Part shown: positions 594 to 38,391 of the stretch, in pieces | Layout: each line of letters opens with the position of its first letter | Position numbering within the stretch: position 1 is the first letter of the stretch | Assembly (NCBI RefSeq): GCF_022045235.1 | Contig: NW_027266267.1 | Coordinates: forward strand, 27,094,001 to 27,158,000 | Origin: Haliotis cracherodii | Lineage: Eukaryota | Reading direction: 5' to 3' | Length of the DNA: 64,000 nt | Notes under the pieces: generated by a model | Database searches by the model: none | Told to the model about the DNA's origin: nothing | The model's input: the letters and a program-made list of their open reading frames with translations, nothing else | Position numbers and translations under genes: made by a program

Positions 594-845
594 TGCCTCC
601 CATTGTCTACATTCGAGACTGTATGAAGCAGTGCTGTTTGTTTGTTGACGCCCCTGTGTACTGACATGCCCCTGAGACAGACACGGGAGGAGGATGGTCG
701 AAGGTGATGTTTTGGTTGTTGGGATATCGTGTCCAGGAGGTGAACTCGTTGTATATGTCCGTCACTCCCATGTCCACAGGTTCTGGAGATTGTTTTTATC
801 GAACGGGTTTTGAAACCTGCCTGTACATCTGAATGAGATCATCTA
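594..845 (-). pseudogene. Degenerate intronic duplicate of Ig exon 3 (pseudo-exon), copy A
   Basis: Aligns to exon 3 (QNLWTWE, TSWTRYP, LLHTVSN) with indels; its acceptor end is replaced by the minisatellite. Confidence 0.8.
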
Positions 846-2204: not shown

Positions 2205-2350
2205 ACAAGTGAATCTGAACAACTGACCGTCATCCTAACTGATCCTGACGGGAGAAGGGAACATCTCTAAGATGGATAAGGTGAGATATATGATAGTAAC
2301 AATGCATGTGAGCATTCTGGACGATAAGCAGTTTATAAAAGAGGCTATAC

Positions 2351-4637: not shown

Positions 4638-4646
4638 TATATAAAA
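4638..4646 (+). promoter_or_regulatory. TATA box of the solo LTR
   Basis: TATATAAAA preceded by CCAAT motifs near 4574 and 4605. In the reconstructed LTR an Inr-like TCA follows about 31 nt later. Confidence 0.65.
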
Positions 4647-4667
4647 CCATGCAGATGCCCCTTTGTC

Positions 4668-4952
4668 AATCTAGACGAAAACGATTTCGAAACTGAAGAT
4701 GACGTAAACGAAATTACTCGATCAGCCCCTAAAAAACTCAAAAACCGCAAACGCAAAAATCAACCCCAACCACAACCCCCCATAACTTCCAAACTAAACA
4801 ACATCACAATCTTACTGGCCTATATGCTCAAACAAATCAAACCTGAGGCTAGCTCCAAAAATCTTCACAAAGTAGCCCTAAACCTAAAACTCACCACTCA
4901 AAGTTACAATGAGTTCCTAATAAACTACTCAACAGCAACCGCAGGACTATAG
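4668..4952 (+). pseudogene. ORF1 C-terminal remnant of LINE copy 1
   Basis: Open frame ...SAPKKLK...LNNITILLAYMLKQIKPEASSKNLHKVALNLKLT...*, matching the end of ORF1 at 20165-21790. Confidence 0.8.
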
Positions 4953-7900
4953 ACAATCCAAACAACCATTAAAACCATAATCTCCAAACACTAAAAACCC
5001 AAATAATGACAGGCCTAAATATCTTTCAGTGGAATGCGGACGGGCTTAACTCCCACAGCCACGAATTAAAAGCTAGATTTAAACTAAAACAAGGACCACA
5101 TATAGCGTGCATCCAGGAAACTAAATTCTCCAATAAATCCAAATTCTACCTACCAAACTATAACATAGTCAGACAAGATCGACCTAAATCCAAAACAACT
5201 AGAGCATCGGGTGGCCTCCTAATACTTATTAGAGAAGATATAAGCTACGAGCAAATCCAAGTAAATACCCCAAACCTAGAAGCCAATGGTATCCAAATCA
5301 CCCTAAAAAACCAAAAAATAAACATCATAAACATCTACCACTGGCAACAACAGAAAATCCAACCAGAGGATCTAAACATACTCCAAAAGTTAGGCAACAA
5401 ATCTACCATTTTCCTAGGAGATTTCAACGCCCACCACCCCTCCTGGGGCACGGGGGATAAACTAGATAACCACGGCAAACTAATATCAGAATGGATAGAA
5501 GCTAACGATCTAGTACTTCTAAATAACAACCGTCCCACCAGATACGATAAAAGCAATAGAGACATGTCGGCTATCGACCTAACCATATGTACAGCAGACC
5601 TAGCTCAAAGTACCCAATGGGAAGTTCACGACGCCCCCTTAGGAAGTGATCACTTCCCCATAAACATAACCGTAGGAAACACTAACGTCCCAAACCAAAC
5701 CGAAAGTTCAGAACCCAAATTTAACTATAACCAGGCTAACTGGGATAAATTCCAAAATATCTGCAACCAAGCTAACCTACTAGAACTAGAGAATAGTGAC
5801 CCAGAAATATACTGCCAAAACCTAACGGACTTCATAGTAAACGCAGCCAAAAGCGCAATCCCCTTCAATAAACCCAATAAATCGGGTAGGCCCTCTGTAC
5901 CCTGGTGGAACGAGGAAATAGAATTAACTAGACAAAAACGTAAAACAGCCTTCAACAAAGCCAAACGCGACCATAACCACATACCAGTAGCTCACCAACT
6001 AAACCACCAGGTACAAAAACTAGTTAAAATAGCTAAAACTAGAGACTGGAAAAAATTCTGTGAGGGACTAAACAACCGCACAGATGCCAGAACGGTCTGG
6101 CGTAAAATTCACGCCGTTAGAGGCCTAAAACGTCACAAAAAGACACCTAACATAAACAACTCAACAACCCCTAGCGAAAAAGCAGACAACCTAGCAAACC
6201 ACTTCTCGGCCACAAGCAGTAATAACAATTTCAGTGATAAGTTTCAACTAAAACTCAAAACAGAAACCAAACCTACCCAAGAACCAAATAATGATGCCCT
6301 AGAAATAAATCAACCGTACACAATAGAAGAACTCAACTATGTACTTCAAAACAGGAAAAAGGGAACAGCCCCAGGACTAGACCTAACCTCCTACCAAATA
6401 ATTAAAAAACTTCCTCTCAAACTACTTCAGACACTACTTAAACTATATAATCTAATCTATCAAAAAGGTCATGTACCAACCCCCTGGAAAGAGGCACTAA
6501 TCATACCCATCCCTAAACCCGGTAAACCAACCAACCAAGCTAACTCTTATAGACCAATCTCTCTTACCTCCAACCTATGCAAAGTAATGGAATCCATGGC
6601 CAAAAATAGACTTCAACACTATTTATCCCAAAATAACATAATAAACTCAGATCAAAGCGGTTTCACTCCTGGTCGCTCAACCTTAGATAACCTAGCCCGT
6701 CTCGAACAGGATATTAAAACCGGCCAACTAAATAAACAATACACTACAGGCATCTTTCTGGACTTCTCTAAAGCATTTGATATGGTATGGCACAACGGGC
6801 TAATCCAAAAACTTAAAAAAATAGGACTTAAAGGTCAAATCGTAAACTACATCCAAAGCTTCCTCCAAAACCGCAAAATTACAGTGGGTATAGACCAGGC
6901 CTTGTCGGAGCAGTGTCCCCTAGAAAACGGCACCCCACAAGGCAGCATTCTTAGCCCCACACTTTTTAACATTATGATAAACGATCTCTTTGATGGCTTA
7001 TCCCCTAAAATAAACACTTCCAAATTTGCTGACGACGGCGCCCTCTGGATCCGGTCCAAAAGCATCCTAACATCCCAGGACTTACTCCAAAAATCCCTAA
7101 ACAAAATTCAACAATGGGCAGATAAATGGGGCTTCTCCCTCAACTCAGAAAAAACCACAGGAATAGTATTTAAACATAAAAGTATGAGAAAGACCACCCC
7201 AAATCTCAAACTAAACAACAAACCAATCCAGTTCCAAAAACAAACCAAATTCCTAGGCCTAATCTTCGACGAACATCTCTCCTGGGATGCCCACGTCGCA
7301 AACCTAATTACCAAATGTAGCAAAGACCTAAACACACTAAGATGTTTAACCGGCTCCAACTGGGGTGCCTCCAAAGATACTCTCCTCAGCCTCTATACAT
7401 CCCTAATCAGATCCAAATTAGACTATGGCTGCGCCATATACGACACCTTAAACAAAAGCTTAGCCCAAAAACTAGACTCAATACAGTACCAAGCTCTAAA
7501 ACTAGTCACACGTACTCAACAAGGCACCTCCCTCACTTCACTTCAGGCCTTAACAGGAGAAATGCCACTAAATCTTCGTAGACAATATCTAACACTAAAT
7601 TTCTGGGCAGCGGCCCAATCAAATCCTCTCCTCCAAAACCTACTAGATCAAAATATCCGTCCCCAAAACCAGGCTCTAACCAGGAAACACCCCCTCCTCA
7701 CACCGATATCCCAACGAATACTAAACTACCGTAACGAACACCAAATAGGAAACCTAAAACAAAACTGCAAAAACTCCAATGTATTCACCCCTAAACTCAA
7801 AATTCCAAAAATAGACACATCACTAGCAAACAAAATCAACAAACAAACAGATCCAAATATAGCTAAATCCACCTCACTAGCTTACATACATCAAAACTGG

Positions 7901-9026
7901 CCAAATTGGTGTCACATATATACAGACGGATCCGCTGATCCGATCACAAATCATACAGGTTTCGGAGTCCACATAGCCCAACCAACCAGAAATACGCAAT
8001 CCTACCAACTCCCAAACAACCAATCCATATTCACTGCAGAGCTCATGGGTATGGTCACAGCCCTCCATAACCAGCACACTAAAAACCAAAAAAAAATCCT
8101 AATACTTACAGACTCGCTAAGTGGACTACAGGCCCTCCAAAGCAAAAACACCAAAAATCGACCCAAATTAATTAACCAAATCCTAAAAAGTATAAATAAC
8201 CTAAGAGAGGTAGGCAAGGAAATAGTACTTATATGGATCCCAGCCCACGTAGGAATATACGGGAACGAAAACGCTGACCTAGCCGGTAAAAAATCACTTA
8301 AAATCCCGGAAATTAGCCTAAAGCTACCAATATCCAAAGCAGAGATCAAAAGTATCAACAAACGCAAAATCTCCCAAAAATGGCATAACCTCTATCAAAA
8401 CACAAACACCCAAATCATTAAAATCCTCAATAAACCCCTTCCCAAACCAAAAATCCTCCACCCCTCCAAAAAAATCGACAGGATAATCACCAAACTCCAA
8501 ACAGGTCACACCAAACTAAATAGCCATCTCCAAAAACTTAAAAAACACGCAAACGGGAAGTGCCCACATTGCAAACATTCAGAAACAATAGAACACGCCC
8601 TCCTACACTGCACCCACTACAACACCCACAGAACAACACTTAAAACCAAACTGAAAATAAATACAGCTCTTACCTTAGAAGCATTACTAAACCCCCTAAA
8701 TAACCCAGAAATATTCAAAACCCTAGGCATATACCTAACTAAAACGGACCTCATCAACCGAATCTAAACATAACCAATTAATAAACACTAGCATGTAATA
8801 CACCAACCCACCCCTACACACTCCCTTAGTCCTAACCACACCCCCAAGGCATATATTCCAAATTTCAAAATTTTCAAAAATTTATTTAAGCAACCTCTAA
8901 AAACCCCACTCAGGTTGCACACCTCTCGTTCCGCCTAGAACCTCACTAAATGGCCCGACCGGGCCCGTGTGCGAAATACGCTTCAGTCGGAAAGCGCACG
9001 TAAAATCTCCTAATATAAGTAAGTAA
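4669..9026 (+). mobile_element. Non-LTR retrotransposon copy 1 (I/Nimb-type), 5'-truncated, intact ORF2
   Basis: ORF1 C-terminal remnant, full ORF2, structured 3' UTR and (TAAG)n tail. Flanked by the direct repeat CCCTTTGTCA at 4659-4668 and 9027-9036. Confidence 0.9.
5006..8767 (+). CDS. LINE ORF2: APE endonuclease, reverse transcriptase, RNase H, C-terminal CCHC (1253 aa)
   Basis: QWNADGL, CIQETK, GDFNAHH, SDHFPI (APE); YRPISLTS, LDFSKAFD, GTPQGSILSP, FADD (RT); IYTDGS, AEL, TDSLS, WIPAHVGIYGNENAD (RNase H); CPHC-x7-H-x4-C. Confidence 0.95.
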   Translation: MTGLNIFQWNADGLNSHSHELKARFKLKQGPHIACIQETKFSNKSKFYLPNYNIVRQDRPKSKTTRASGGLLILIREDISYEQIQVNTPNLEANGIQITLKNQKINIINIYHWQQQKIQPEDLNILQKLGNKSTIFLGDFNAHHPSWGTGDKLDNHGKLISEWIEANDLVLLNNNRPTRYDKSNRDMSAIDLTICTADLAQSTQWEVHDAPLGSDHFPINITVGNTNVPNQTESSEPKFNYNQANWDKFQNICNQANLLELENSDPEIYCQNLTDFIVNAAKSAIPFNKPNKSGRPSVPWWNEEIELTRQKRKTAFNKAKRDHNHIPVAHQLNHQVQKLVKIAKTRDWKKFCEGLNNRTDARTVWRKIHAVRGLKRHKKTPNINNSTTPSEKADNLANHFSATSSNNNFSDKFQLKLKTETKPTQEPNNDALEINQPYTIEELNYVLQNRKKGTAPGLDLTSYQIIKKLPLKLLQTLLKLYNLIYQKGHVPTPWKEALIIPIPKPGKPTNQANSYRPISLTSNLCKVMESMAKNRLQHYLSQNNIINSDQSGFTPGRSTLDNLARLEQDIKTGQLNKQYTTGIFLDFSKAFDMVWHNGLIQKLKKIGLKGQIVNYIQSFLQNRKITVGIDQALSEQCPLENGTPQGSILSPTLFNIMINDLFDGLSPKINTSKFADDGALWIRSKSILTSQDLLQKSLNKIQQWADKWGFSLNSEKTTGIVFKHKSMRKTTPNLKLNNKPIQFQKQTKFLGLIFDEHLSWDAHVANLITKCSKDLNTLRCLTGSNWGASKDTLLSLYTSLIRSKLDYGCAIYDTLNKSLAQKLDSIQYQALKLVTRTQQGTSLTSLQALTGEMPLNLRRQYLTLNFWAAAQSNPLLQNLLDQNIRPQNQALTRKHPLLTPISQRILNYRNEHQIGNLKQNCKNSNVFTPKLKIPKIDTSLANKINKQTDPNIAKSTSLAYIHQNWPNWCHIYTDGSADPITNHTGFGVHIAQPTRNTQSYQLPNNQSIFTAELMGMVTALHNQHTKNQKKILILTDSLSGLQALQSKNTKNRPKLINQILKSINNLREVGKEIVLIWIPAHVGIYGNENADLAGKKSLKIPEISLKLPISKAEIKSINKRKISQKWHNLYQNTNTQIIKILNKPLPKPKILHPSKKIDRIITKLQTGHTKLNSHLQKLKKHANGKCPHCKHSETIEHALLHCTHYNTHRTTLKTKLKINTALTLEALLNPLNNPEIFKTLGIYLTKTDLINRI

Positions 9027-9033
9027 CCCTTTG

Positions 9034-9246
9034 TCAGCCCCAAAAACCAAAAGCTATAGAAAAAAACTCACCCAAAACGTAGCAAGCAAAAATCTAAACA
9101 ACTTAGTCCTCCTACTAGCTTACGTGTTAAAGCAGTCTAATCCAGAAGCCAGCTCCAAAGCCTTCTTTGGTGTAGCACATAAACTAAAACTCGTCACCAC
9201 CTCTTTCGACCGTTTCAGCAGCAACCTTAATAACCTACTAAAGTAA
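9034..9246 (+). pseudogene. ORF1 C-terminal remnant of LINE copy 2
   Basis: SAPKTKSYRKK...NLNNLVLLLAYVLKQSNPEASSKAFFGVAHKLKLVT, homologous to the ORF1 ends of copies 1 and 3. Confidence 0.8.
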
Positions 9247-9293
9247 ATACCTAAACCAAGCCTAAACCAAACATAAATCCACCCAGTTTCCCA

Positions 9294-12200
9294 ATGGAAG
9301 GCCTAAACATTTTTCAATGGAATGCCAATGGCCTCGCCGGCCATGGTTCTGAACTCAAAGCTAAATTCAAAATAGATAAAGGTCCCCATGTAGCTTGTAT
9401 TCAAGAAACCAAATTCTCACATAAAACTAAATTCAACCTACCAAATTATAACGCAGTGAGAACCGACAGGTCCAAAACCATGCCAGGCAGAACAGGAGGA
9501 GGTCTAATCATCTACGTTAGAGAGGATATTAACTACGAGGAAGTTAAAGTAAACACTCCTAATCTAGAAGCCAATGGAATCCAAGTCACCATCAATAACC
9601 AAAAAATAAAAATTATTAACATCTATCACTCAACACTAAAACCAATTAAAGATACAGACCTAGATGTCCTTTACCAATTAGGAAATAAATCAACCATCTT
9701 CCTAGGAGACTTCAATGCCCATCATCCTACCTGGGGCATTGCGGATAAACTAGACAACCATGGACAACTAATATCAGAGTGGATCGAAAAAAATGACCTA
9801 ATACTATTAAACAATAACCAACCAACTAGATACGACAAAACCCACCACACCATGTCGGCTATCGACTTAACAATATGTACGCCAGACTTAGCACAAAGTC
9901 TGATGTGGGACGTCCACCCAGTACCTCTAGGCAGCGACCACTTTCCCATAAATATAACCCTAGGAAATATAAAAATACCAAATCAAACCCCTAAACAGGA
10001 ACCTAAATTTCAGTACAAAAACGCCAACTGGGACCAATTCCAAGAATTATGCAACGAAGCTAATCTAAACGATTTAGAAACAACAGACCCCGAAACATTC
10101 TGTCAAAACCTAACTAACTTCATAATCAACGCAACCAAATCCGCAATCCCCTTCAAATCATCCAACCCAGGAAAACCCACTGTCCCTTGGTGGAATAAGG
10201 AAATAGAGCTAACTAGACTAAAACGCAAATCAGCTTTCAACAGAGCTAAACGAGACCCCTCTCATCTCAAAACAGCTCATGAACTTAACCACCAAGTGCA
10301 ATACCTAGTTAAAACTGCTAAAACCAAAAACTGGAAAAAATTCTGTGAGGAGCTAAACCACCACACCGACGCTAGGAAGGTGTGGCGCAAAATTCACGCC
10401 ATCCGAGGCATCAAACGGCACAAAAAAAGCCCCAATATAAACAACTCAACTAACCCCACCCAAAAGGCCAACAACCTAGCCAAACACTTCTCTAAAGTTA
10501 GCAGCAACAGTAACTTCAGTAAGAAATTCCAAGATAAACTAAATAAAGAAACCAAATTCCCCAAAGAAAACAGACAAGACAACCTAGAAATAAATCAACC
10601 TTACACCATAGAAGAACTAAATCACGTACTAAACAACAGAAAAAAAGGAACAGCCCCTGGCCTAGACCTCACCTCTTACCAAATAATCAAACACTTACCT
10701 ACCAAACTACTCCAAACTTTACTTAAACTATACAACCTAGTCTACCTAAACGGACAGGTCCCTTCCTCATGGAAGGAAGCTCTAGTAATCCCAATACCTA
10801 AACCAAATAAACCAGCAGATCAGGCAAACTCCTATAGGCCCATCTCCCTAACCTCAAATCTCTGCAAAATAATGGAACTTATGACTAAAAATAGGCTACA
10901 GCACTACCTAGACCAAAACAACATCATAAATCCTGACCAGAGCGGCTTCACTCCTGGCCGATCAACTCTCGATAACCTTGCCCGACTAGAACAGGATATA
11001 AAAACAGGACAGCTAAACAAGCAATACACCATAGGCATATTCCTCGACTTCTCTAAAGCTTTCGATATGGTATGGCACCACGGGCTAATACAAAAACTTA
11101 AAAAAATAGGACTAAAAGGTCAAATAATAAACTTCATCCAAGATTTCCTAAACAATCGCAAAATTACCGTGGGTATAGACCATACACTATCGGACCAGTG
11201 TCCCCTAGAAAATGGCACTCCCCAGGGCAGCATCCTCAGCCCAACCCTCTTCAATATAATGATAAATGATCTATTCGAGGGCTTATCCCCTAAACTAAAC
11301 ACTTCAAAATTCGCGGATGACGGAGCCCTATGGATCCGCACTAAAAGCATTAAAATGGCAGAAAACTTAATCCAAAAATCTCTAAATAAAATACAACAAT
11401 GGGCAGACAAATGGGGCTTCTCCCTTAACTCAGATAAAACAACAGGAGTAGTATTCAAACATAAAAACACGAAACCTGCCTACCCAATCCTCCAGCTAAA
11501 CAACCAAACAATCAAATTCCAAAAACAAACAAAATTCTTAGGACTTATTTTCGATCAACACCTCACCTGGGAGGCTCACGTCCAAAACCTAAAAACTAGA
11601 TGCAGCAAAGACCTTAACACATTAAGATGTCTCACCGTCTCTAACTGGGGAGCCTCCAAAGATACCCTCCTCTCACTATATACAACACTAATTAGATCAA
11701 AACTAGACTACGGCTGTGCCATATACAATACCCTAAACAACTCTCTTTCTAAAAAACTTGACTCAATACAATATCAGGCTCTCAAACTAATTACACGCAC
11801 CCAACATGGCACCTCCTACACCTCACTTCAGGCCCTTACAGGAGAAATGCCACTAAATCTACGCAGGGAACATCTAAGCCTTAATTTCTGGGCCGCGTCC
11901 CAAACAAACCCTCTCATCCAAAACCTAATTAACCAAAACATTAGCCCAAGAAACCAAGCTCTAGCTCGCAAACACCCCTTACTCACCCCAATATCCCAAA
12001 GAATAACTAACTACCTCAATGAACACCAAACTCAAAATCTTAAACAGAACTGCGAAAAATCAAATATCTTCACCCCTAAACTCAAAATACCCCAAATAGA
12101 CACAACGCTAGCTAACCAAATAAATAAACAAACCGACCCAAACATAGCTAAAACCACCACACTTGCATACATACACGAAAATTGGCCAAATTGGTGTCAC

Positions 12201-13052: not shown

Positions 13053-13106
13053 AAATTAATTAATCTACCAATCCAAAATCCAATAAACATACAAACACAC
13101 ACCTCA

Positions 13107-13590
13107 TAGTAGAGTCATATCCCTGGAATCCGTGACCACTTTATTCCTACCTTTTTTTTATGATGGATTCGTTTAACTGACATGTCTAACTAAAAAAATA
13201 GCCCCCATGACCCTCTGGAAAATGACGGCTAACTCTGCCAGAACGCAAAATTCAAAATGGCCGTCGACGCCATTTTGAATAGCATGAAATAGTATATCTA
13301 TGGAAGAATATCAGCCACAGACACATATAAGGTGTCTAATTCCACTAATTTGAACGTGATAAATCCATTGGAATTGTTATTTTTTACATTAGAAGCAATT
13401 ATGACCTTGAATTCCAAGATGGCTGCCGGCTGCCATCTTGAAAAACAGAAAATATCATATCTCGAATACTAGATGGGCTACAAGAACAAATGAGGTGTCT
13501 TATCTAACTAATTTTAACATGATAAAACTATTGGAATGGTTAATTATATCCTTGGGATCATATTTATCTCAATATTCAAAATGGACACCA
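13107..13590 (+). repeat. Left terminal inverted repeat of the Academ element
   Basis: Reverse complement of 18863-19346, about 3 mismatches by eye. Confidence 0.95.
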
Positions 13591-13699
13591 TATATGAAAT
13601 TATTTGGGTGTTTGAAATTCTTATAATTATATGAGGAGGTAATACTGTACTAAGAACTACAGAACGCAACTAAAAAGATGCTTTGGAAACTCTTTACAA

Positions 13700-15556: not shown

Positions 15557-18207
15557 GGCTTGCCTGTCATTGACTGAGCGAAAAACCCAGTCTCCATGAA
15601 AGAAGCCTGTTCGTCAGGAAGGTTGTCAAGTACTGCACTAAAATCAGGGAGATGTCGACCATACTTGGTGTTGTCATAAGCCACCATCCATGGCAGCATG
15701 AGCTTCAGTGAAGATTTGAACTCAGTCCAGTTCCTTGTTCGTAGAGCATGGATGTTTTGGGTGAGAACTTCCACTATTTCCATAAAAGATATCCAGTACT
15801 GTGCTTGTGGTGCATCATGATATTCTTCGAAGAGAGTATCAACAAGGTGTTTCAGCTCTGCATTGCTTTCCAGTTTGCTATACGCTTCCGCAAGTTCCTC
15901 ATCTTTTGCATCAGTCTGCTGTCTAAGCTGGGAAATAGAAGCCTTGACTTCATCAGATAGAGCTGTACCTTCCAAACGCCTGTTTAGTGCATGATGGACC
16001 ATTGTTTCATAGAAGAGGTACAGACATCGTACACCACGCTTGAAATGTTTTCCTCGGAGTGCTTGATCTACCGACCCTTCTGCAATTACACCTGCTGCCA
16101 CTAACACATCAGAAATACCTGAACCCTTAAACCTCTTGTAAATGGCATAGATGAATGACATTTGGATGTGGAAGGGTCCCATGAACGGCAAAATTTTGCT
16201 GAACTGAACCGCCTTCTCGTTTTTTAACTTCAGCAAGAGCAAGTAGACCGGATAATCACCTACAATGATTGCGAAAGGCATCTTTTTTTCATTAATTGAC
16301 TTAGCAAGTTTGCACATTACATCATAGAGGATGGTCTTACTAGGCGGGTCAGAATATGTCATGTAGTATATTGCACGGCTCTTCTCTTGTGGTTGTGACA
16401 TGTTAGCATGAAACCCTTTATAACCAGGCACTTGCTGTTCTTCTGGCTTTGGTCTTGAGAGGTCATCTTGGGCCCTGGACAGTGCATGAATAACACCACG
16501 TGTCCTCTGAGTAGATGTGTCCAAAAGAATACTGTTGTTTTCTGTCTCTGTCCTGATGGGTGGCTCCCCACGCTTAACTGTCTTGTATGGATCAATCTTC
16601 TGCATTTCACTTCCAAGTTCCTTGAGAGAGGCAGAGAGAGATGAGGCAAGTTTTGCACTGGGAACTGGACGAGTTTCATGACTCTCCAACGGTTCCGAAT
16701 CAAAAGATTCTGGTTGAACAAACATCACGTTAGTGCGGTGTGGTTGATCAGCACCAGTGAGTGTGTCACTCTTGAAGTCATCATTGTCTACTATAGCCAC
16801 AGCAGGTTTGCCTTCAGCAAGCTCGAACGGACAATTCAATGAATGTTTTAGGTCAGTCGATACCCAGAAATCCCGCAGCATAAGAACATCATTGTAGCTG
16901 ATGCCCAAACCATCTTTGTGCATTACATCAATGATCTCCCTACTTTTTGTCAGTCCATATAGCATGACTGACATATTCGTCTCAAATGCAGTGTGTTTTC
17001 CGGTGATGTAATTTGTGATGACAGAAGCAATTGAACGGACAGTTGGACAATCATCAATGACAGCCATCGTTGGATGCTTCATCCAGGTGATCAGCTTCAA
17101 TAGAAGTTCACTCAGTTCTTCTTCTCTCTCCAATTCATGGATGTATGGAGGCCAGGGGACAGTGTTAATGCTCATGACTTGCTCCTTGAGTCGTGCTGCA
17201 ACATTCATAGCTAGCTGATCATTGCTGACACCAAGTGAATATATTGCAGCCTCAACATATGTTCCTCCTGCTGTGGTATCATAGACCAGTTCACTCTGAT
17301 TCTTCTTATTGCGTTCATGAAATCCGATGCTTTCACTAAATTCTTTGATCAGAAGTTCTTTTAAGTAGCTAGATTTAACTATTGAATTATGCCCAAAATT
17401 TGAGATGATGCGCTTGTAATCATTCAGGAGACTTTGTACGGTACGGAATTCATGATCTTTGAAAATTACTTGATGAACATGATTGACGAAAATACTCTGT
17501 GCTTCTCGGAGGTTCACCCGCTGAAGATGCTGAGCGCTTTCATCAGTGATACCCTTATGGTCACTGAGATACTTTCGCCAGCATCCACGATGATACCGTA
17601 TTTCAATTCCAAATGCTGTTTCAGCATCAAGGATAGAATCAATTAAAGTGTTGAGTCTCTCTCTCATGGTAACATCATCCAGATGGATGGTGTGAAGCTT
17701 AAACCTTCTCCAGGCATCTTTTGTTGAGAGCAGAATTAGCTGCTTGTCACGATCCTTCTGTTTTGGGTTGGCTTCTTTCATGCACCAAATGCAGCGTTCC
17801 TTGTTATGAAGGCAACTAATACTGGAACGTAGTTTTTTTGGTGCCTGTGGGACTAGATCATCTGAGTCTTCCACTCTGCACATGCTTTGCTTAGATTTTG
17901 ACAAGCGGTTCTGAGATTGCAAGAGCTTGCTGCCACTGGATAATGTCACATAACAAGAATTATGCATGTTGTGCCCTGTCGGCCCTTTCGCCCAGTCTAC
18001 TGTGCCACAAACATTTCCAAATTTGTCAAGTCCTTCACATTTTGTGGCCTTTTCTTTCATGGTATTCCATTTAGCAGGAGTCATATTGTCAATGTTGTCA
18101 CCTTCTGGACAGGCATTCTCACATAGCATACAGAAGAATGATTTTTGTTTCCGCTTTAATGGAGCACCATCATAACGTCTGCTAGGTCCATCCTCTGCCT
18201 CCGCCAT
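15553..18207 (-). CDS. Academ protein N-terminal part: Cys/His motifs and DDE-type transposase core
   Basis: CxxC...YHxxC motifs, IVDNDDF, IVGDYPVY, GPFHIQMSF. Ends abruptly at GKP*, overlapping the next ORF. Confidence 0.75.
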   Translation of the reverse strand: MAEAEDGPSRRYDGAPLKRKQKSFFCMLCENACPEGDNIDNMTPAKWNTMKEKATKCEGLDKFGNVCGTVDWAKGPTGHNMHNSCYVTLSSGSKLLQSQNRLSKSKQSMCRVEDSDDLVPQAPKKLRSSISCLHNKERCIWCMKEANPKQKDRDKQLILLSTKDAWRRFKLHTIHLDDVTMRERLNTLIDSILDAETAFGIEIRYHRGCWRKYLSDHKGITDESAQHLQRVNLREAQSIFVNHVHQVIFKDHEFRTVQSLLNDYKRIISNFGHNSIVKSSYLKELLIKEFSESIGFHERNKKNQSELVYDTTAGGTYVEAAIYSLGVSNDQLAMNVAARLKEQVMSINTVPWPPYIHELEREEELSELLLKLITWMKHPTMAVIDDCPTVRSIASVITNYITGKHTAFETNMSVMLYGLTKSREIIDVMHKDGLGISYNDVLMLRDFWVSTDLKHSLNCPFELAEGKPAVAIVDNDDFKSDTLTGADQPHRTNVMFVQPESFDSEPLESHETRPVPSAKLASSLSASLKELGSEMQKIDPYKTVKRGEPPIRTETENNSILLDTSTQRTRGVIHALSRAQDDLSRPKPEEQQVPGYKGFHANMSQPQEKSRAIYYMTYSDPPSKTILYDVMCKLAKSINEKKMPFAIIVGDYPVYLLLLKLKNEKAVQFSKILPFMGPFHIQMSFIYAIYKRFKGSGISDVLVAAGVIAEGSVDQALRGKHFKRGVRCLYLFYETMVHHALNRRLEGTALSDEVKASISQLRQQTDAKDEELAEAYSKLESNAELKHLVDTLFEEYHDAPQAQYWISFMEIVEVLTQNIHALRTRNWTEFKSSLKLMLPWMVAYDNTKYGRHLPDFSAVLDNLPDEQASFMETGFFAQSMTGKP

Positions 18208-18862
18208 TTTAAAGAATATGGAAGAGGAAGATCTTCGTGATCACTGTTACCACTACAGAAGCTTTATTTAGATCTATTACTACAATGCAGTGACTAATAG
18301 GCACCTGATACCGAATTAAATATAGCAAAATGATTTCCTTGGCATCTGAAAATAATATATCCTTTGCAGAATTTATAATAACTACCTTAGCATTAAGTTA
18401 TTTGCTTTAACATTCAAAATCAGTTTTAGGTTGTTGATGTTGTGCTTCAAACAAATTGTTGAGGTCAAACAGACAATTTCCCCCTCAATCCTTAGATATT
18501 GACCAATATCACATTACACTGGCATTGGATGAAGATGACAGTTAGATAGGGCACATACAACTATTTACATTAAAATTCATACCAAGATCATTACAATCGG
18601 TTTATCATTTCTTAATGTATGACAATACTACACCCAACTGGTAAAGAAACGCATAACTCAAAAACACGCAAATTTAATGTTAAATACTTTAGCATGATCA
18701 ATTTTGGTCGTTACTAATAGATTTGTTAAATTCAACATTTTAGCTGTAATCACCTACAAAAAATATCTTTCTAGCTCATATAGTTTCCAAGGTATAACCC
18801 TTCAAAATTATCCGGCATGTGCGTTTCTTTTGTAGATGAGTATACCTTATATGCTACATTGT

Positions 18863-19346
18863 TGGTGACCATTTTGAATATTGAGATAAATATGATCCCA
18901 AGGATATAATTAACCATTCCAATAGTTTTATCATGTTAAAATTAGTTAGATAAGACACCTCATTTGTTCTTGTAGCCCATCTAGTATTCGAGATATGATA
19001 TTTTCTGTTTTTCAAGATGGCAGCCGGCAGCCATCTTGGAATTCAAGGTCATAATTGCTTCTAATGTAAAAAATAACAATTCCAATGGATTTATCACGTT
19101 CAAATTAGTGGAATTAGACACCTTATATGTGTCTGTGGCTGATATTCTTCCATAGATATACTATTTCATGCTATTCAAAATGGCGTCGACGGCCATTTTG
19201 AATTTTACGTTCTGGCAGAGTTAGCCGTCATTTTCCAGAGGGTCATGGGGGCTATTTTTTTAGTTAAACATGTCAGTTAAACGAATCCATCATAAAAAAA
19301 AGGTAGGAATAAAGTGGTCACGGATTCCAGGGATATGACTCTACTA
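18863..19346 (-). repeat. Right terminal inverted repeat of the Academ element
   Basis: See left TIR. Confidence 0.95.
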
Positions 19347-20164
19347 TCACCCGGCTCCCTTAGTTCCCTCCTCCACCCACCTCGGCATTTATTCCAAATT
19401 TAAAAATTTCAAAAAATCGATATAAGCAACCCCTAAAAGCCCCCTCTTGGGTTGCACACACCACTTTCACCCTTCTCGGAATACACTAAATGGCCCGGCC
19501 AGGCCCGTGTGCGAAATACGCTGTAGTCGGAAAGCGCACGTTAAATCTTCTATATCAGTCAGTCAGCCCCTTTGGTATCGCATTGCCTGATAGCCAGCCA
19601 AGGAAACTCCATCATCGGTAATTATCACGTTATCCTTATTCACATACTCTTAAAATCACTCTCACCGAATTAATCATAAAACCCCTAAATCCTTAAAAAA
19701 CAACAACACTAAATAACCAACACCTTATCCTACCCAATCTCCCTAACACAGCTCGCACTCATTTCTACTCACACCAACGCCCACCACTCAAACACACCCT
19801 TTGACCCAACTCCTAAAAACAAAAAACACCTAATCCCCCCTTCTCCTAAACACAACGCTCGCTCTTTCCTACTCACCACCCACGCCCACCACTCACATAC
19901 CTCCACTCCTTCGACTAAATATCTCTTAATCCCCGCTTTCCACTTGTCTCACCTTATCCCAGCCTTCCAGAATCAAACTTAATCTTCAATAAATAATCCA
20001 TTTCCCAAACCCTCCTACTAAAACCAACAACAAATAACCACCGCAACCTCCTCCGCCTCCTAAACACAACTCACCAAGTAAAAACAACAAACCAACTCAC
20101 CTCCCCAAAACACTCCACCACCGCTCACCACAACACACGCTCTCCAACACAACACCCAAACAAT

Positions 20165-21790
20165 ATGACTGACACCCGCAACGCCACACTCGCAGACATT
20201 CCAGCTCCTTACTCACCCACGCCTGCGGAAGCGCACAACACTTCTGGGAGGTCACTCGAAAACATCGTCCCGACCGAGTATGGCGAAAACACGACATACA
20301 CCACCCCAACCAAACCAGCTAACTCGCCACCACAAAACACCAAAAAACGCAAACTCGACACATCCACTCCACCTCCATCGCCAACACCCTCCCCGGCCGC
20401 CTTCCTCACCACCTTCGCCCTCTACTTCTTCTCAGCAGGCTCAGGCACCACTCTCTCACTGGAACTTTCGGCAGACAAAATAGGACTTTGGTTCAAAAGA
20501 CAAAAAATAAATTACAACAATATTAAAAAAGCCAACAAAGGATACCAGATAATCTTCCCTAACCGAGAATCTTACAACGCAGCAAATAAAATAACTCAAA
20601 TATTCCACGTCACGGTAATCAAACAAACACCTAATTGGCAACAATATACACGAGGCGTAATTAGGGTTAACCCCAGGGAAACAACTGAGGACTTACAATT
20701 ATACTCTCTAGAAGCTAACATAAACCAAGACCAAAACCCTCAACCCCTCATCACCAGCACGCGCAGAATAACCTCAACTAGAAACGGAAAAACGGTCCCA
20801 ACCTCCATTGTCATAATCAACTTTAAAAAAACCGCTAAATTCCCTGAAGCCCCCAAACACATATCCTTCGGAGCCCACACCAACTTAGAAGTCAAACCCT
20901 ATATAAAGCAGGTCAAGCAATGTTCAAAGTGCCTCAAATACAACCACACTGCTTCCCAATGCACCTACCCTAAAACTAAATGTAAAAAATGCGCACAAAC
21001 AGACTGCCCAGGCACATGCACACCCTGGTGCATCCACTGCAAATCCACCCAACACACCTCACTTTCAAACCAATGCCCACACAGACACACACTCACCCAG
21101 CAGGCCAACAAACACGTAAACATAGAAACGGCTAAAATCCAAACACGAAAATTTGCTACACCTGCATCTAAACCACTCCTCCCTACACCACACCCAAACA
21201 CCATCCCACAAACAAACACCACACCCATAACCGACAGCTCTGTCTGGGACCCCTACCGAGAAACCGCACCCACCTCACACACACAAGCAGCCACTCAACC
21301 AACCACGAACCCTCCCAAAACATCAACCCCCGCATGCAAAACAAACCTCAAAATGACCACCACAACACGACCCTCATCCAAGCACCCTACAGCCCATATG
21401 GCAACAACGCTCTCCCACAAGCAAGCACAACAACAAAACACAAACACTAAGAAAACATCAGCTACACCCATCCCGCCAACACCTTCACAACCCTCCACAT
21501 CACATGCCTCCCCCATGGAAACTCAACCATCTAAACCTAATCCAACCCATGACGAAGATTTCTCCACTACTGAGGAAACAATAGACACTACTCCAACTAA
21601 AACAAATCAAACTTCCCAACCAGCCAACACCCCAAACCTAAATAACCTCACCTTACTCCTAGCATATATGCATAGTCAAAACTCACCAAAAGCTAGTATG
21701 GAATCCTTCCACAAAGTAGCTTTCAATCTAAAATTAACCGATCTTCCCTTCTTCCTCTTTAACCTCCATCTAAAAGAACTCACCGAATAA
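20165..21790 (+). CDS. LINE ORF1 gag-like nucleic-acid-binding protein (541 aa)
   Basis: Zinc knuckles CSKCLKYNHTASQC, CKKC..C and CIHCKSTQHTSLSNQC; T/P-rich linker; sits just upstream of ORF2. Confidence 0.9.
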   Translation: MTDTRNATLADIPAPYSPTPAEAHNTSGRSLENIVPTEYGENTTYTTPTKPANSPPQNTKKRKLDTSTPPPSPTPSPAAFLTTFALYFFSAGSGTTLSLELSADKIGLWFKRQKINYNNIKKANKGYQIIFPNRESYNAANKITQIFHVTVIKQTPNWQQYTRGVIRVNPRETTEDLQLYSLEANINQDQNPQPLITSTRRITSTRNGKTVPTSIVIINFKKTAKFPEAPKHISFGAHTNLEVKPYIKQVKQCSKCLKYNHTASQCTYPKTKCKKCAQTDCPGTCTPWCIHCKSTQHTSLSNQCPHRHTLTQQANKHVNIETAKIQTRKFATPASKPLLPTPHPNTIPQTNTTPITDSSVWDPYRETAPTSHTQAATQPTTNPPKTSTPACKTNLKMTTTTRPSSKHPTAHMATTLSHKQAQQQNTNTKKTSATPIPPTPSQPSTSHASPMETQPSKPNPTHDEDFSTTEETIDTTPTKTNQTSQPANTPNLNNLTLLLAYMHSQNSPKASMESFHKVAFNLKLTDLPFFLFNLHLKELTE

Positions 21791-21833
21791 AATAAAAACT
21801 AAAAACTAAATCACCAATCACCCGAAACCAATA

Positions 21834-24800
21834 ATGGAAGGACTAAATATTTTTCAGTGGAACGCCAACGGACTCACCTCCCACGGCCATGAACTAAAAA
21901 CTAAATTTAAACTAAATAAAGGCCCTCACATTGCTTGTATACAGGAAACCAAATTCTCAAAAAAATCGAAATTCACACTACCTAACTACAACTCAGTTAG
22001 AACTGACAGAGCTAAACCGAAAACAAGAAGAGCCGCAGGAGGACTAATCATATTTATCAGGGAAGATATAAATTACGAAGAAATAAAAATAGACACGCCA
22101 AACCTAGAAGCCAACGGCATTAAAATCACATTAAATAACCGAAACATAAACATCATAAATATTTACCACTGGGCGGAACAAAAAGTCCAACCTGAGGATC
22201 TAAACAAACTACTCAAAATAAGCGATAAATCTACTATATTCCTAGGAGACTTTAACGCTCACCATCCTACATGGAGCATAGATGATAAAATAGATAATCA
22301 TGGCAAATTAATCTCCGAATGGATAGAAACAAACGACCTAGTACTCCTTAATAGCAACCAACCCACGAGGTACGATAAGATAACCCAAAAAATGTCGGCT
22401 ATCGACCTAACCATATGCACCGCAGATCTAGCCCAAAGCACTCAATGGGAAGTGCACGACGTCCCGCTAGGTAGCGACCACTTCCCCATAAACATAACCA
22501 TAGGAAATACAAACGTACCAATCCAAACAGAAAACCAAGAACCAAAATTCCATTACAATAAAGCTAACTGGGACCAATTCCAAGATATCTGCAACGAAGC
22601 TAACTTAAACGAAATAGAAAATAATGATCCAGAAACCTATTGTAAAAACCTAACAGACTATATAATAAACGCAGCCAAAACCTCCATCCCCTTCAAAACA
22701 TCTAAGACAGGCAAACCGACGGTACCATGGTGGAATGAGGAAATAGAACAGACCAGACGAAAACATAAATCAGCCTTCAATAAAGCAAAACGCGACTACA
22801 AATATTTAAACATAGCCCACGAACTAAACCACCAGGTTCAAAAACTAGTCCAAATAGCCAAAAGTAGAGACTGGAAAAAATTCTGCGAAGGTATAAATAA
22901 CCGTACAGATGCCAGAACGGTCTGGCGCAAAATCCACGCCATTAGAGGCTTAAAACGACATAAAAAAAACCCCTAACATTAACAACTAAACCAACCCCGC
23001 CCAAAAAGCAAATAATCTCGCCAACCACTTTTCGGCCGTTAGCAGTAACAGCAACTTCAGCCAAAAATTCCAAGATAAACTTAAAACAGAAAACAAACCC
23101 ACAAAAGAACCAAACAATAACAATCTAGAAATAAATCAACCCTACACAATGGAGGAGCTCCTCTACGTAATCCAAAACAGGAAAAAGGGCACAGCCCCAG
23201 GATTAGACCTAACCTCTTACCAAATAATTAAAAAACTCCCCCTAAAACTACTCCAGGCACTACTCAAACTATACAATCTCATCTACCTAAACGGACAGGT
23301 TCCTACTTCCTGGAAACAGGCCCTAGTCATACCAATCCCTAAACCTAATAAACCAGCTAATCAAGCTAACTCATATAGACCAATATCCCTAACTTCAAAC
23401 TTATGTAAAGTAATGGAATCAATGGCTAAAAATAGATTACAACATTACTTAACCCAAAATAACACCATAAACCCAGATCAAAGCGGTTTCACTCCTGGCC
23501 GCTCAACCCTAGATAACCTCGCCCGACTAGAACAAGATATTAAGACAGGACAACTAAATAAACAATATACCACAGGCATCTTCTTAGACTTCTCTAAAGC
23601 TTTCGACATGGTATGGCACGATGGGCTAATACAAAAACTTAAAAAAATAGGACTCAAAGGTCAGATAATAAACTACATCCAGGACTTCTTAAACAATCGT
23701 AAAATAACCGTGGGTATAGACCAAACTCTATCGGACCAATGTCCCCTAGAAAATGGCACTCCACAGGGCAGTATCCTCAGCCCCACCCTCTTCAATATAA
23801 TGATAAACGATCTATTCGAGGGTCTATCCCCTAAAGTAAACACATCAAAATTCGCGGATGATGGAGCCATCTGGATCCGCACTAAAAGCATGAAAATGGC
23901 CAAAAATCTACTCCAAAAATCTCTTAATAAAATACAACAATGGGCTGACAAATGGGGCTTCTCCCTTAACACAGAAAAAACAACAGGAATAGTATTCAAA
24001 CATAAAAACATGAAACCCGCCTCCCCAATCCTCCAGCTAAACAATCAAACAATCAAATTTCAAAAACAAACCAAATTCTTAGGACTTATTTTCGATGAAC
24101 ATCTCACCTGGGATGCTCACATCCAAAACCTAACAACTAAATGCAGTAAAGACCTAAACACCCTAAGATGCCTAACTGGCTCTAACTGGGGAGCCTCCAA
24201 AGATACTCTCCTCTCTCTCTACATATCCCTAATTAGATCAAAACTAGACTACGGCTGCGCCATATACAACACCCTAAACAACTCTCTATCTAAAAAACTT
24301 GACTCAATACAATATCAGGCTCTCAAACTCATTACACGCACCCAACATGGCACCTCCTACACCTCACTTCAGGCCTTAACAGGAGAAATGCCACTAAGTC
24401 TACGCAGGGAACAGCTAAGCTTAAATTTCTGGGCCGCGTCCCAATCAAACCCTCTCATCCAAAACTTAAGCCCCAAACCAAAACATCAGCCCCAAAAACC
24501 AAGCTCTAGCTCGTAAACACCCCTTACTTACAACCAACTAAAACCACACAATCCTTCCGACTCCCAAATAACCAATCAATATTCACGGCCGAACTAATGG
24601 GCATGGCCTCAGCCCTCCACAATCAAGAATCCAAAAACAACCAAAAAATCCTAATACTTACTGACTCCCTAAGTGGACTACAAGCCCTCCAAAACAAAAA
24701 TACCAAAAACTGACCTAAATTAATAAATCAAATACTTAAAAGCTCCAACGACCTAACAAAAGCAGGCAAACAAATAACTTTCTTGTGGATACCCGCCCAC

Positions 24801-25318
24801 GTAGGAATATACGGTAATGAAAACGCCGATAAAGCAGCTAAACTATCACTCAAAATCCCAGAAATAAGCTTAAACTTACCCATCTCAAAATCAGAAATTA
24901 AAAGTGTAAACAAACAAAAAATCACAAAAAAATGGCATAACCTATATCTAAACTCAAATAGCCAAATCAAAAGAGTGCTCAGCAAACCACTAACCAAACC
25001 AAAAATTCTCCATCCATCAAAAAAATCGACAGAGTAATCACTAAACTCCAAACAGGACACACCAACCTAAATAACCACCTAAAAAAACTTAAAAAACACA
25101 CTACAGGTAACTGCCCCCACTGCAAACAACCAGAAACCCCAGAACACGCACTCATCCACTGCACACACTACCTAACACATCGAACCGCATTACAAACCAC
25201 CCTCAATCTAAACAAGGCTCTCACTCTAGAAGCAATACTAAACCCACAAAATAAACTAGAAAACTTCAAGGCCTTAGGCGTATTCTTAATAAAAACGGAA
25301 CTAATAAAACGCATCTAA
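21834..25318 (+). pseudogene. LINE copy 3 ORF2, inactivated
   Basis: Frameshift in an A-run near 22965, TAA at 22987, frameshift near 24470, ~280-bp deletion near 24530 removing IYTDGS of RNase H, TGA at 24711, frameshift near 25020. Confidence 0.9.
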
Positions 25319-25611
25319 AACCATAATAACCTACCAAATCAAAATCACATAAACAAACAAACATCCACCATACCCAGCTCCCTTAGTTCTCCTCCCCAAC
25401 CCCATCGGCATCTATTCCAAATCTCAAAATTCCCAAATTATATATAAGCAACCCCTAAAGCCCCCTCTTGGGTTGCACAGACCACCCTCGCCCCTCTCGG
25501 AAACACATTAAATGGCCTGGCCGGGCCCGTGTGCGAAATACGCATCAGTCGGAAAGCGCACGTTAAATCTCCAAAGTAAGTAAGTACCTTTTGGTATCAC
25601 ATCTGCTCAAG

Positions 25612-25617
25612 AATAAA
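25612..25617 (+). terminator. Polyadenylation signal of the solo LTR
   Basis: AATAAA about 100 nt before the terminal CA, downstream of the inferred TSS. Confidence 0.5.
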
Positions 25618-38287: not shown

Positions 38288-38391
38288 TGAGTGAGTGAGT
38301 GAGTATGGTTTTACGCCGCTTTTAGCAATATTCCAGCAATATCACGGCGGGGGGACACCAGAAATGGGCTTCACACATTGTACCCATGTCG
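38288..38391 (-). mobile_element. 5'-truncated short tRNA-SINE
   Basis: 3' part of the 51227-51389 family; TSD TGTCTTGGATGAG at 38275-38287 and 38392-38404; empty site in the paralog at 27842. Confidence 0.9.

What the first reader, a model, noticed from the sequence alone, without database searches (positions are those of the whole stretch)
4638..25606. Three distinct I/Nimb-type LINEs stacked head-to-tail at one site 20 bp downstream of an LTR TATA box: candidate promoter-targeting retrotransposon system
Seen: removing the LINEs rebuilds TATATAAAACCATGCAGATG^CC(C/T)(C)TTTGGTATCACATCTGC...AATAAA. Every LINE 3' tail joins this same point: CCCTTTGTCA at 9027, CCCCTTTGGTATC at 19567, CCTTTTGGTATC at 25587, with CCCCTTTGTCA at the left edge (4658). 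The elements differ in ORF2 sequence, tail repeat (TAAG vs TCAG) and 5' end, so they are independent insertions rather than a tandem duplication. The site also lies between inverted heptamers GCAGATG (4651) and CATCTGC (25600). Inferred order is 3, then 2, then 1: copy 3 is decayed, and the copy-1 TSD includes TCA that appears to be the 5' end of copy 2. Each newcomer therefore chose the target copy still adjacent to the TATA box, although CCCTTTG existed at the other junctions. This points to recognition of upstream sequence or of a bound preinitiation complex. Known: site-specific APE LINEs are mainly R1- and Tx1-clade, and Dictyostelium TRE elements are positioned by Pol III factors. I do not know of I/Nimb elements targeting the core promoter of an LTR.
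Basis: partly seen in the sequence, partly recalled or inferred. Interest (0 to 1): 0.92.

Follow-up and report, generated by a model that had tools for sequence, protein, structure and literature searches.

The report
LINEs that insert just behind TATA boxes
Three different jumping genes (LINEs) sit one behind another at a single spot 20 bases after the TATA box of a solo LTR, and across this genome their relatives land at that same distance after unrelated TATA boxes, a way of choosing targets I could not find described for LINEs.

Summary
Three LINEs (77-81% alike in ORF2) with different tails lie head to tail in a solo LTR (3994-4657 + 25587-25718). Every 3' tail abuts the same LTR bases, 20-21 nt after the first T of the TATA box (4638).

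The site is not LTR-specific. I read 35 insertions with target-site duplications (TSDs) from three retrieval routes. In 25, the best TATA-like 8-mer upstream of the nick starts at -20 or -21 (p~2e-24). A strong TATA sits there in 24/35, against 1.1% of random positions. Spacers and TSDs are unrelated in sequence. Targets include several repeat families and a 5S rDNA array.

In this LTR family, 7 of 15 copies that carry the site hold a LINE there, from several LINE families. One is a deletion variant with a different downstream sequence, still cut at TATA+20. Each insertion leaves the TATA and spacer intact, so the site can be reused, which explains the stack.

Full-length copies start 28-36 nt after the TATA, about where transcription would begin, which suggests promoter capture. 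Whether host TBP or an element protein reads the TATA is unresolved; I favour TBP.

Corrections:
- All three copies are 5'-truncated.
- Copy 2 carries a nested 6.2-kb DNA transposon.
- The 3-2-1 order is only partly provable.
- The I/Nimb clade is untested.

Other agents of this scan reported the same rule on other DNA of this genome.

The parts
3990..3993 (.). Left copy of the 4-bp target duplication (ATTG) of the solo LTR
   Evidence: A paralogous empty site at 37060-37090 reads ...GTTGATTGCACCAGC. Here ATTG flanks both ends of the insert.
3994..4657 (+). Solo LTR, left part (starts TGTTATC; U3 with the TATA box)
   Evidence: About 23 copies in the genome. It has TG...CA ends. In other copies the LTR end is followed by a PBS-like GT-TGGTGGAGAATCCGGG, and a shared internal sequence precedes the LTR start.
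4638..4646 (+). TATA box TATATAAAA. Its first T lies 20 nt before the nick site
4658..4668 (+). Leftmost copy of the duplicated target (CCCCTTTGTCA). The nick lies at 4657/4658 or 4658/4659
   Evidence: It matches CCCTTTGTCA at 9027-9036.
4669..9026 (+). LINE copy 1, 5'-truncated inside ORF1. ORF2 at 5006-8767 is intact (1253 aa: endonuclease, RT, RNase H). The tail TAATA(TAAG)n lies at 9011-9026
   Evidence: Family members continue upstream of this start and are 97-99% identical at the 3' end.
9027..9033 (+). Second copy of the target (CCCTTTG), joined to copy 2 through TTG microhomology
9034..13106 (+). LINE copy 2, first part, 5'-truncated inside ORF1. ORF2 at 9294-13052 is intact (1252 aa)
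   Evidence: Of 20 sampled family copies, 17 run on through this point into family sequence and three have their own nearby truncation points.
13107..19346 (-). Nested DNA transposon in copy 2's 3' UTR. It has 485-bp inverted ends (99.4% identical) and ends TAGTAGAG...CTCTACTA. It makes a 3-bp TCA duplication. Its minus-strand ORFs are 884 aa (weak DUF6589 match) and 618 aa
   Evidence: The empty site is seen in an intact family copy, L054.
19347..19566 (+). LINE copy 2, last part, with a conserved 3' stem-loop region. The tail (TCAG)3 lies at 19555-19566
19567..19579 (+). Third copy of the target (CCCCTTTGGTATC)
19580..25586 (+). LINE copy 3. It lacks about 285 nt of the family's 5' end and has an internal deletion of about 285 nt. 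ORF1 lies at 20165-21790 (541 aa, three CCHC-like knuckles). ORF2 is broken into 21834-22976 and 23149-24516. The tail (GTAA)n lies at 25573-25586
25587..25598 (+). Rightmost copy of the target (CCTTTTGGTATC, one base changed)
25587..25718 (+). Solo LTR, right part, with AATAAA at 25612-25617. It ends ...TTCTCA
25719..25722 (.). Right copy of the LTR's ATTG target duplication

Best explanation
Shown:
- A group of related LINE families in this genome starts target-primed reverse transcription at a position set by a TATA-like box, not by the sequence at the cut.
- The strand complementary to the LINE is nicked 20-21 bp downstream of the first T of the box.
- The other strand is cut about 6-13 bp further on, which gives the target duplication.
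- The element ends up reading away from the box, usually in the box's forward orientation.
- The box and the 20-bp spacer stay intact upstream of every new insert, so the site is regenerated and can be hit again. That is how three different LINEs came to be stacked in this solo LTR.

Inferred:
- The box is most likely read through host TBP (TFIID, or TFIIIB at the 5S genes) or a larger pre-initiation complex that positions the LINE ribonucleoprotein.
- The likely benefit is promoter capture. A full-length copy begins about 31 nt after the TATA, where transcription would start.
For: The rule:
- In 35 insertions with readable target duplications, the best TATA-like 8-mer within -45..-8 starts at -20 or -21 in 25 (binomial p~2e-24). 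After collapsing repeated target families it is 19 of 27.
- A/T content at -20..-16 is 91-100%, against about 55% elsewhere.
- A strong TATA at -20/-21 occurs in 24/35 sites, against 1.1% of 20,000 random positions.
- The rule holds in three independent samples: copies retrieved through 3' ends, full-length copies retrieved through the 5' UTR, and copies of this LTR.

Downstream sequence is irrelevant:
- Target duplications are unrelated in sequence.
- An LTR deletion variant with a different downstream sequence (GCCATCAAC) is still cut at TATA+20 (L006/L047).
- In L109/L179 and L041, the newcomer's duplication consists of the resident LINE's own first bases.

Pressure on this site:
- 7 of 15 site-bearing LTR copies hold a LINE there, from several families.

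Pointers to TBP:
- Degenerate A/T-rich boxes are accepted, such as TATTTAAA, ATTAAATA and TATGTAAC.
- A 5S rRNA gene's upstream TATATGTA box is used. The nick is about 10 nt before the 5S start, and a second LINE lies on the other side of the box in the opposite orientation.
- ORF2 is collinear with human L1 ORF2p from endonuclease through RT, and no extra DNA-binding domain was detected.
- Precedents exist: TRE5-A ORF1p binds TBP, Brf1 and Bdp1, and Ty3 needs TBP and Brf1 (PMC5911963).

Promoter capture:
- Full-length copies start with (CA)GTTGCAG 28-36 nt after the TATA.
Against: - The sample is about 35 of more than 1000 copies, and I read the duplications by eye.
- About 11 sampled insertions gave no readable duplication or were stacks.
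- Three or four sites have only a weak A/T-rich box (L028, L073, L131, L126).
- Orientation bias is incomplete: 15 forward, 4 reverse, 16 symmetric.
- A LINE also entered the LTR antisense, 21 nt after TTAAAATA. That is unlikely to be a working promoter and fits direct DNA reading as well as TBP.
- Nothing here shows TBP or any protein contact.
- No RNA data showed LTR-LINE transcripts.
- In the window, the order of copies 3 and 2 is not provable.
Confidence: 0.6

Rival explanations
1. The same TATA+20 rule holds, but an element-encoded protein reads the box directly. Candidates are ORF1p with its CCHC knuckles, or a part of ORF2p outside the endonuclease. This protein binds the A/T-rich octamer and places the endonuclease two helical turns downstream, with no host factor involved.
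For: - The rule applies to A/T-rich boxes that are unlikely promoters, such as the antisense TTAAAATA in the LTR and poor boxes at L028 and L073.
- It applies inside stacks, where the downstream DNA is LINE sequence.
- Quasi-symmetric boxes are used in both directions.
Against: - No DNA-binding domain beyond the usual LINE set was detected in ORF1 or ORF2.
- The accepted boxes are as degenerate as TBP's own range.
- The two cuts fall where a pre-initiation complex opens DNA and starts transcription. That would be a coincidence under this model.
Confidence: 0.3
2. Sequence-specific targeting of this LTR: the endonuclease recognises CCCTTTGG, or the GCAGATG...CATCTGC inverted repeat around it, as R1- or Tx1-type LINEs recognise their targets.
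For: All four junctions in the window carry CC(C)(C)TTTG. Several other copies of this LTR are hit at the same place.
Against: - Only about 23 LTR copies exist, against more than 1000 LINE 3' ends.
- Of the 60 retrieved 3' flanks, 57 lie outside this LTR. The other three are the window's own two junctions and L047.
- The LTR deletion variant lacks the downstream sequence and the second heptamer, yet is cut at the same distance from the TATA.
Confidence: 0.02
3. The array is an artefact or a secondary rearrangement: a tandem duplication, a mis-assembly, or one insertion event with template jumping between LINE RNAs.
For: LINE reverse transcriptases can jump between templates. Two sampled stacks (L055, L071) show no target copy between their elements.
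Against: - The three copies differ by about 20% and belong to separate young families.
- A copy of the target lies between each pair, which a single event cannot produce.
- Similar stacks with repeated target copies occur at many unrelated loci.
- I could not check long reads.
Confidence: 0.03
4. Insertion is random, and the pattern comes from later survival or amplification of copies that happen to sit behind a TATA box.
For: Copies behind a promoter could be better sources of new copies.
Against: - Dead fragments as short as 50-300 nt, with no coding capacity, show the same one-to-two-base precision.
- Selection cannot set the position of the target duplication to the nucleotide.
Confidence: 0.02

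Closest known systems
Dictyostelium TRE5-A (a tRNA-gene-targeted LINE with an AP-type (APE) endonuclease)
   Same: It is a LINE with an APE endonuclease that integrates at a set distance from a promoter landmark in otherwise unrelated DNA. Its ORF1 protein binds the TFIIIB subunits TBP, Brf1 and Bdp1. It also enters next to 5S genes (PMC5911963).
   Different: TRE5-A targets Pol III genes, about 44-54 bp upstream, in the opposite orientation and over a window of several bp. Here the landmark is a TATA-like box, mostly of Pol II type (LTRs and other repeats). The offset is 20-21 bp downstream, the orientation is sense, and the precision is 1-2 bp. No protein contact has been shown here.
Yeast Ty3 (LTR retrotransposon; integration at Pol III start sites through TFIIIB)
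   Same: It integrates with nucleotide precision at the transcription start. TBP and Brf1 are required, and the geometry is set by a TBP-containing complex (PMC5911963; bioRxiv 10.1101/2021.07.27.453949, listed).
   Different: Ty3 uses an integrase and double-stranded cDNA, not target-primed reverse transcription. It is restricted to Pol III genes.
Sequence-specific LINEs (R1, R2, Tx1, TRAS/SART, Utopia)
   Same: They hit one exact position repeatedly, form head-to-tail arrays at that target, and depend on the host's transcription of the target.
   Different: Those elements recognise one conserved target sequence at the cut. Here the sequence at the cut and the spacer are free, and only the A/T-rich box 12-20 nt upstream is shared.
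Drosophila telomeric HeT-A/TART/TAHRE arrays
   Same: They are head-to-tail LINE stacks in which an upstream neighbour's sequence can drive the next element. This rests on my own knowledge and was not tested here.
   Different: Those arrays grow at chromosome ends, not at an internal promoter landmark, and they have no target duplications.

Membership tests
   Pfam Exo_endo_phos(_2), RVT_1 and RNase_H in copies 1 and 2. ORF2 is collinear with L1 ORF2p over endonuclease and RT.
   Copy 3's ORF1 has three Cys/His knuckle-like motifs, as does a related element in L004. No Pfam family reached threshold.
   No reference LINE library was available. The 59 homologues found carry no clade names, and the best is 46% identical.
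Sequence-specific LINE (R1/Tx1 type) | Nearly all copies lie in one conserved target sequence | tested here: not met
   The 3' flanks of 60 copies are diverse. No base is conserved from -12 to +10.
Position-specific retrotransposon guided by the transcription machinery (TRE5-A/Ty3 type) | Fixed distance and orientation relative to a promoter element, in unrelated sequence contexts | tested here: met
   Offset of -20/-21 in 25/35 sites. Orientation is 15 forward, 4 reverse, 16 symmetric.
Position-specific retrotransposon guided by the transcription machinery (TRE5-A/Ty3 type) | Physical interaction of an element protein with TBP/TFIIIB or another factor | not testable with these tools
Position-specific retrotransposon guided by the transcription machinery (TRE5-A/Ty3 type) | Restriction to Pol III-transcribed genes | tested here: not met
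   Most targets are LTR-like or other TATA-bearing repeats. 5S rDNA is only one target among many.
LTR of an LTR retrotransposon (the host of the stack) | TG...CA ends, a short target duplication, a TATA box and poly(A) signal, and an adjacent primer-binding site in full copies | tested here: met
   No gag-pol partner was identified.

The most novel reading that the evidence does not exclude
The LINE ribonucleoprotein reads an assembled TBP-containing pre-initiation complex, at Pol II promoters and at the TATA-bearing Pol III 5S promoter. It nicks the template strand at the upstream edge of the region that melts at initiation (TATA+20/21) and cuts the other strand near +1. On this reading the target duplication corresponds to the initial transcription bubble. 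Every full-length copy is then delivered with its first base at the start site of a captured TATA promoter.
Probability: 0.3. Interest if true: 0.95.

Novelty: new variant of a known kind. Interest (0 to 1): 0.85.

Why it matters
LINEs are known to choose targets in two ways. The endonuclease can read the sequence at the cut. In one amoeba lineage, the element contacts Pol III factors instead.

A LINE group positioned to the nucleotide by a generic TATA box would be a third mode, aimed at core promoters. That would matter in several ways:
- It would explain how 5'-promoter-poor or truncated copies still get transcribed.
- It would explain why promoters of LTR elements, tandem gene arrays and 5S genes in this genome are hit again and again.
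- It would explain head-to-tail stacks.
- It would give an experimentally tractable link between a LINE ribonucleoprotein and the basal transcription machinery.
- It could be of interest for promoter-directed insertion tools.

Tried and rejected
- **LTR-sequence specificity:** rejected by the flank survey and by the LTR deletion variant.
- **Inverted heptamers as a signal:** absent at other targets, so rejected.
- **RNA 'ruler' idea:** the 3' ends of copies 1 and 2 read TAATATAAG / CTATATCAG just before the tail, 14-24 nt from the tail's end. The RNA might therefore pair with the TATA and measure the distance. I rejected this because the related CCAAACGTAAG-tailed family lacks the motif yet obeys the rule (L051), and tail lengths vary.
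- **5' ribozyme:** Rfam found no HDV-like or other RNA family, either in full-length 5' ends (L106, L108) or in window 3900-26000.
- **Clade assignment:** the homologue search returned 59 unnamed relatives, and the PDB search gave only L1, R2 and TRAS1. Neither placed the elements in a clade.
- **RNA evidence:** the runs found are held only as contigs and cover little of the stretch. They gave no start sites and no LTR-LINE junction. One DNA-like contig showed the uninterrupted LTR form.
- **Long upstream regions:** My first guess at the 3' ends of full-length copies missed by about 275 nt, because the window's copy 3 has an internal deletion. I refetched them.
- **Complex prediction:** no job was sent, because the host TBP would have had to be joined from exons.
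- **Local query only:** the two LTR halves were joined solely as a local BLAST query.
Full report
**1. What is in the window**

Host element. The host of the stack is a solo LTR.
- Self-comparison shows that 3878-3993 and 25719 onward are contiguous in a paralogous unit at about 37079.
- The empty paralogue carries a single ATTG where this copy has ATTG on both sides of an insert. The insert starts TGTTATC and ends TTCTCA.
- With the LINEs removed, the insert is 796 bp.
- The family has about 23 copies in the 1.18-Gb genome.
- In other copies the end is followed by GT plus a primer-binding-site-like TGGTGGAGAATCCGGG. A shared internal sequence precedes the start.
- Uninterrupted copies read TATATAAAACCATGCAGATG CCCCTTTGGTATCACATCTGCTCAAGAATAAA.

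The three LINEs. Three LINEs lie in this LTR, head to tail.
- Copy 1 is 4669-9026, with an intact ORF2 at 5006-8767.
- Copy 2 is 9034-19566, with an intact ORF2 at 9294-13052.
- Copy 3 is 19580-25586. It has ORF1 at 20165-21790 with three CCHC-like knuckles, and a broken ORF2.
- ORF2 regions are only 77.6-81.2% identical between copies.
- Each copy is 98-100% identical to members of its own family elsewhere.
- They are therefore three separate, young insertions, not a duplication.

5' truncation. All three copies are 5'-truncated.
- The families of copies 1 and 2 run on upstream into ORF1 sequence.
- Full-length relatives of copy 3 begin about 285 nt further upstream, with (CA)GTTGCAGTTTGTACC.
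- Copy 3 also lacks about 285 nt inside ORF2.

Nested element. Copy 2's 3' UTR holds a nested 6.2-kb element (13107-19346).
- It has 485-bp inverted ends and a TCA duplication.
- The empty site is visible in an intact family copy.

**2. Is the site special to this LTR?**

No. LINE 3' ends of these families have more than 1000 candidate copies (1195 and 1647 first-look candidates). Their 3' flanks are diverse. Of the 60 retrieved, 57 lie outside this LTR; the others are the window's own two junctions and L047.

The LTR site is nevertheless under heavy pressure. Fifteen LTR copies still carry the site.
- Seven hold a LINE there: the window copy, L003, L004, L006, L008, L015 and L020.
- These LINEs come from several families.
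- They include a 60-nt fragment with a (CT)n tail and an element known only from its ORF1.
- L006/L047 is a deletion variant of the LTR in which the downstream sequence is GCCATCAAC. It is still cut 20 nt after the TATA.

**3. The rule**

For 5'-truncated copies whose two flanks lay within the fetched loci, I read the target duplications. In almost every case a TATA-like box started 20-21 nt upstream of the duplication, on the LINE's sense strand. I reached this reading before consulting the scan's earlier notes.

I then built an independent sample from the other end. I located full-length copies through the 5' UTR, fetched about 95 nt at the 5' junction and about 115 nt at the 3' junction, and read the duplications.

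Pooled, the sample has 35 sites: 15 from 3'-end retrieval, 16 full-length, and 4 in this LTR family.
- The best TATA-like 8-mer within -45..-8 starts at -20 or -21 in 25 sites, and at -19..-24 in 33.
- Chance expectation for -20/-21 is 2 in 37, giving p~2e-24. After collapsing repeated target families it is 19 of 27, p~1e-18.
- A/T content is 91-100% at -20..-16 and 83% at -15/-14, against about 55% elsewhere. No base is conserved from -12 to +10.
- A strong box at -20/-21 occurs in 24/35 sites, against 1.1% of 20,000 random positions in the same loci.
- Target duplications are 6-13 bp, mostly 9-12, so the second cut falls about 30-33 nt after the first T of the box.
- Orientation is biased but not absolute: 15 forward, 4 reverse, 16 symmetric.
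- About eleven sampled insertions could not be used, because they had no readable duplication or were stacks.

**4. Targets**

Several flanks recur.
- At least three related repeat families are hit at one position behind TATATATA boxes.
- Another family is hit behind TATTTAAA, and another behind ATTAAATA.
- One insertion lies in a 5S rDNA array with 3012-bp units.
  - The empty unit reads TCTATATGTAGCTAAAGTTTGCC GATAAGCATT, followed by the 5S gene.
  - The LINE's nick is 21-22 nt after TATATGTA, about 10 nt before the 5S start.
  - A second LINE lies about 20 nt on the other side of the same box, in the opposite orientation.
- In this LTR, a LINE also entered antisense, 21 nt after TTAAAATA (L004/L023).

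**5. Why stacks form**

The box and spacer remain upstream of each new insert, so the site is regenerated whatever lies downstream.

Stacks are common in the samples: L041, L054 (three elements), L055, L067, L071, L105, L111, L114 and L138.

In two cases the order is certain.
- In L109/L179, the 11-bp duplication of a full-length newcomer consists of the first bases of a resident 150-nt LINE fragment.
- In L041, the newcomer's duplication (ACTGTGCGAA) includes the resident's first six bases.

In the window the picture is less complete.
- Copy 1's duplication (CCCTTTGTCA) contains a T that the LTR lacks and copy 2's junction has. The CA could equally be copy 1's own sequence. Copy 1 after copy 2 is therefore likely but not proven.
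- The order of copies 3 and 2 cannot be told from the structure. Only the rule itself favours 3 first.

**6. Mechanism**

Shown: the position of both cuts follows a TATA-like box, independent of local sequence.

Inferred: I favour host TBP, or a complex built on it, for these reasons.
- The accepted boxes are as degenerate as TBP's range.
- A Pol III 5S promoter and Pol II-type LTR promoters are both used.
- The cuts fall at TATA+20/21 and about TATA+31. From general knowledge of pre-initiation complexes, these are where promoter DNA first opens and where transcription starts.
- No extra DNA-binding domain was detected in ORF1 or ORF2.
- TRE5-A ORF1p binds TBP, Brf1 and Bdp1, and Ty3 needs TBP and Brf1 (PMC5911963).

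Direct reading by an element protein remains a serious rival. It is favoured by the use of boxes that are unlikely promoters.

The benefit is probably promoter capture. Full-length copies begin 28-36 nt after the box. In the window, the first base of copy 1 (4669) lies 31 nt after the first T of the box. No RNA evidence could be obtained.

**7. Known or new**

Six full-text searches found no LINE described as inserting at a set distance from TATA boxes. The closest systems are TRE5-A and Ty3. The library does not hold most subscription journals, so an older description cannot be excluded.

Other agents of this scan reported the same rule for other windows of this genome, which one of them calls an abalone. 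Their offsets of about 20, 21, 13-15 and 31 nt fit mine once the reference point is taken into account. These are unchecked AI notes, and I do not count them as support.

**8. Limits**

- The sample is small and hand-read.
- The clade is untested.
- No long-read check of the assembly was possible.

Noticed in passing
window 13107-19346 (minus strand): A 6.2-kb element with 485-bp inverted ends (99.4% identical) and a 3-bp TCA duplication is nested in LINE copy 2. Its two ORFs are 884 aa (weak DUF6589 match, below Pfam's threshold) and 618 aa (no family). It is probably a recently inserted DNA transposon of unclear superfamily.
   Followed up: partly
window 57678-64000: A 53-bp satellite with more than 110 tandem copies, about 90% alike, runs to the end of the window.
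   Followed up: no
window 815-2214, 34933-35293, 45875-46152: Tandem repeat blocks with a period of about 46 bp recur inside a larger unit of about 11 kb. That unit is present three times in the window (about 2349-34330 with the LTR/LINE insert, 34400-45000, and 45000-56000).
   Followed up: no
G000 C23:50.93-51.15 Mb (loci L025, L026, L199): A 5S rDNA array with 3012-bp units has irregular gaps. It holds several LINE insertions on either side of the TATATGTA box about 31 nt upstream of the 5S gene.
   Followed up: partly
window 8950-9010, 19490-19550, 25512-25572: The last 60 nt or so before the tail are nearly identical in LINE families that otherwise differ by about 20%. They can form two stem-loops (GGCCC...GGGCC and CGTGTGC...GCGCACG). 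This is a likely recognition element for the reverse transcriptase.
   Followed up: partly
loci L105-L108 (full-length relatives of copy 3): The 5' UTR holds two copies, about 87% alike and about 235 nt apart, of a segment starting AGTTTGTAC and ending CCAAGGA. This is a monomer-like repeat. The window's copy 3 starts inside the second copy.
   Followed up: no
window 9011-9026 and 19550-19566: The 3' ends of copies 1 and 2 read TAATATAAG and CTATATCAG just before the tail, so a TATA-like motif sits 14-24 nt before the end of many copies. This could make the position right after a LINE a secondary target. A related family lacks the motif.
   Followed up: partly
loci L002, L007, L010, L014-L016: Most other copies of the LTR carry about 770 extra bases between LTR positions 753 and 674, flanked by an 80-bp repeat. 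The window's solo LTR is the short form.
   Followed up: no
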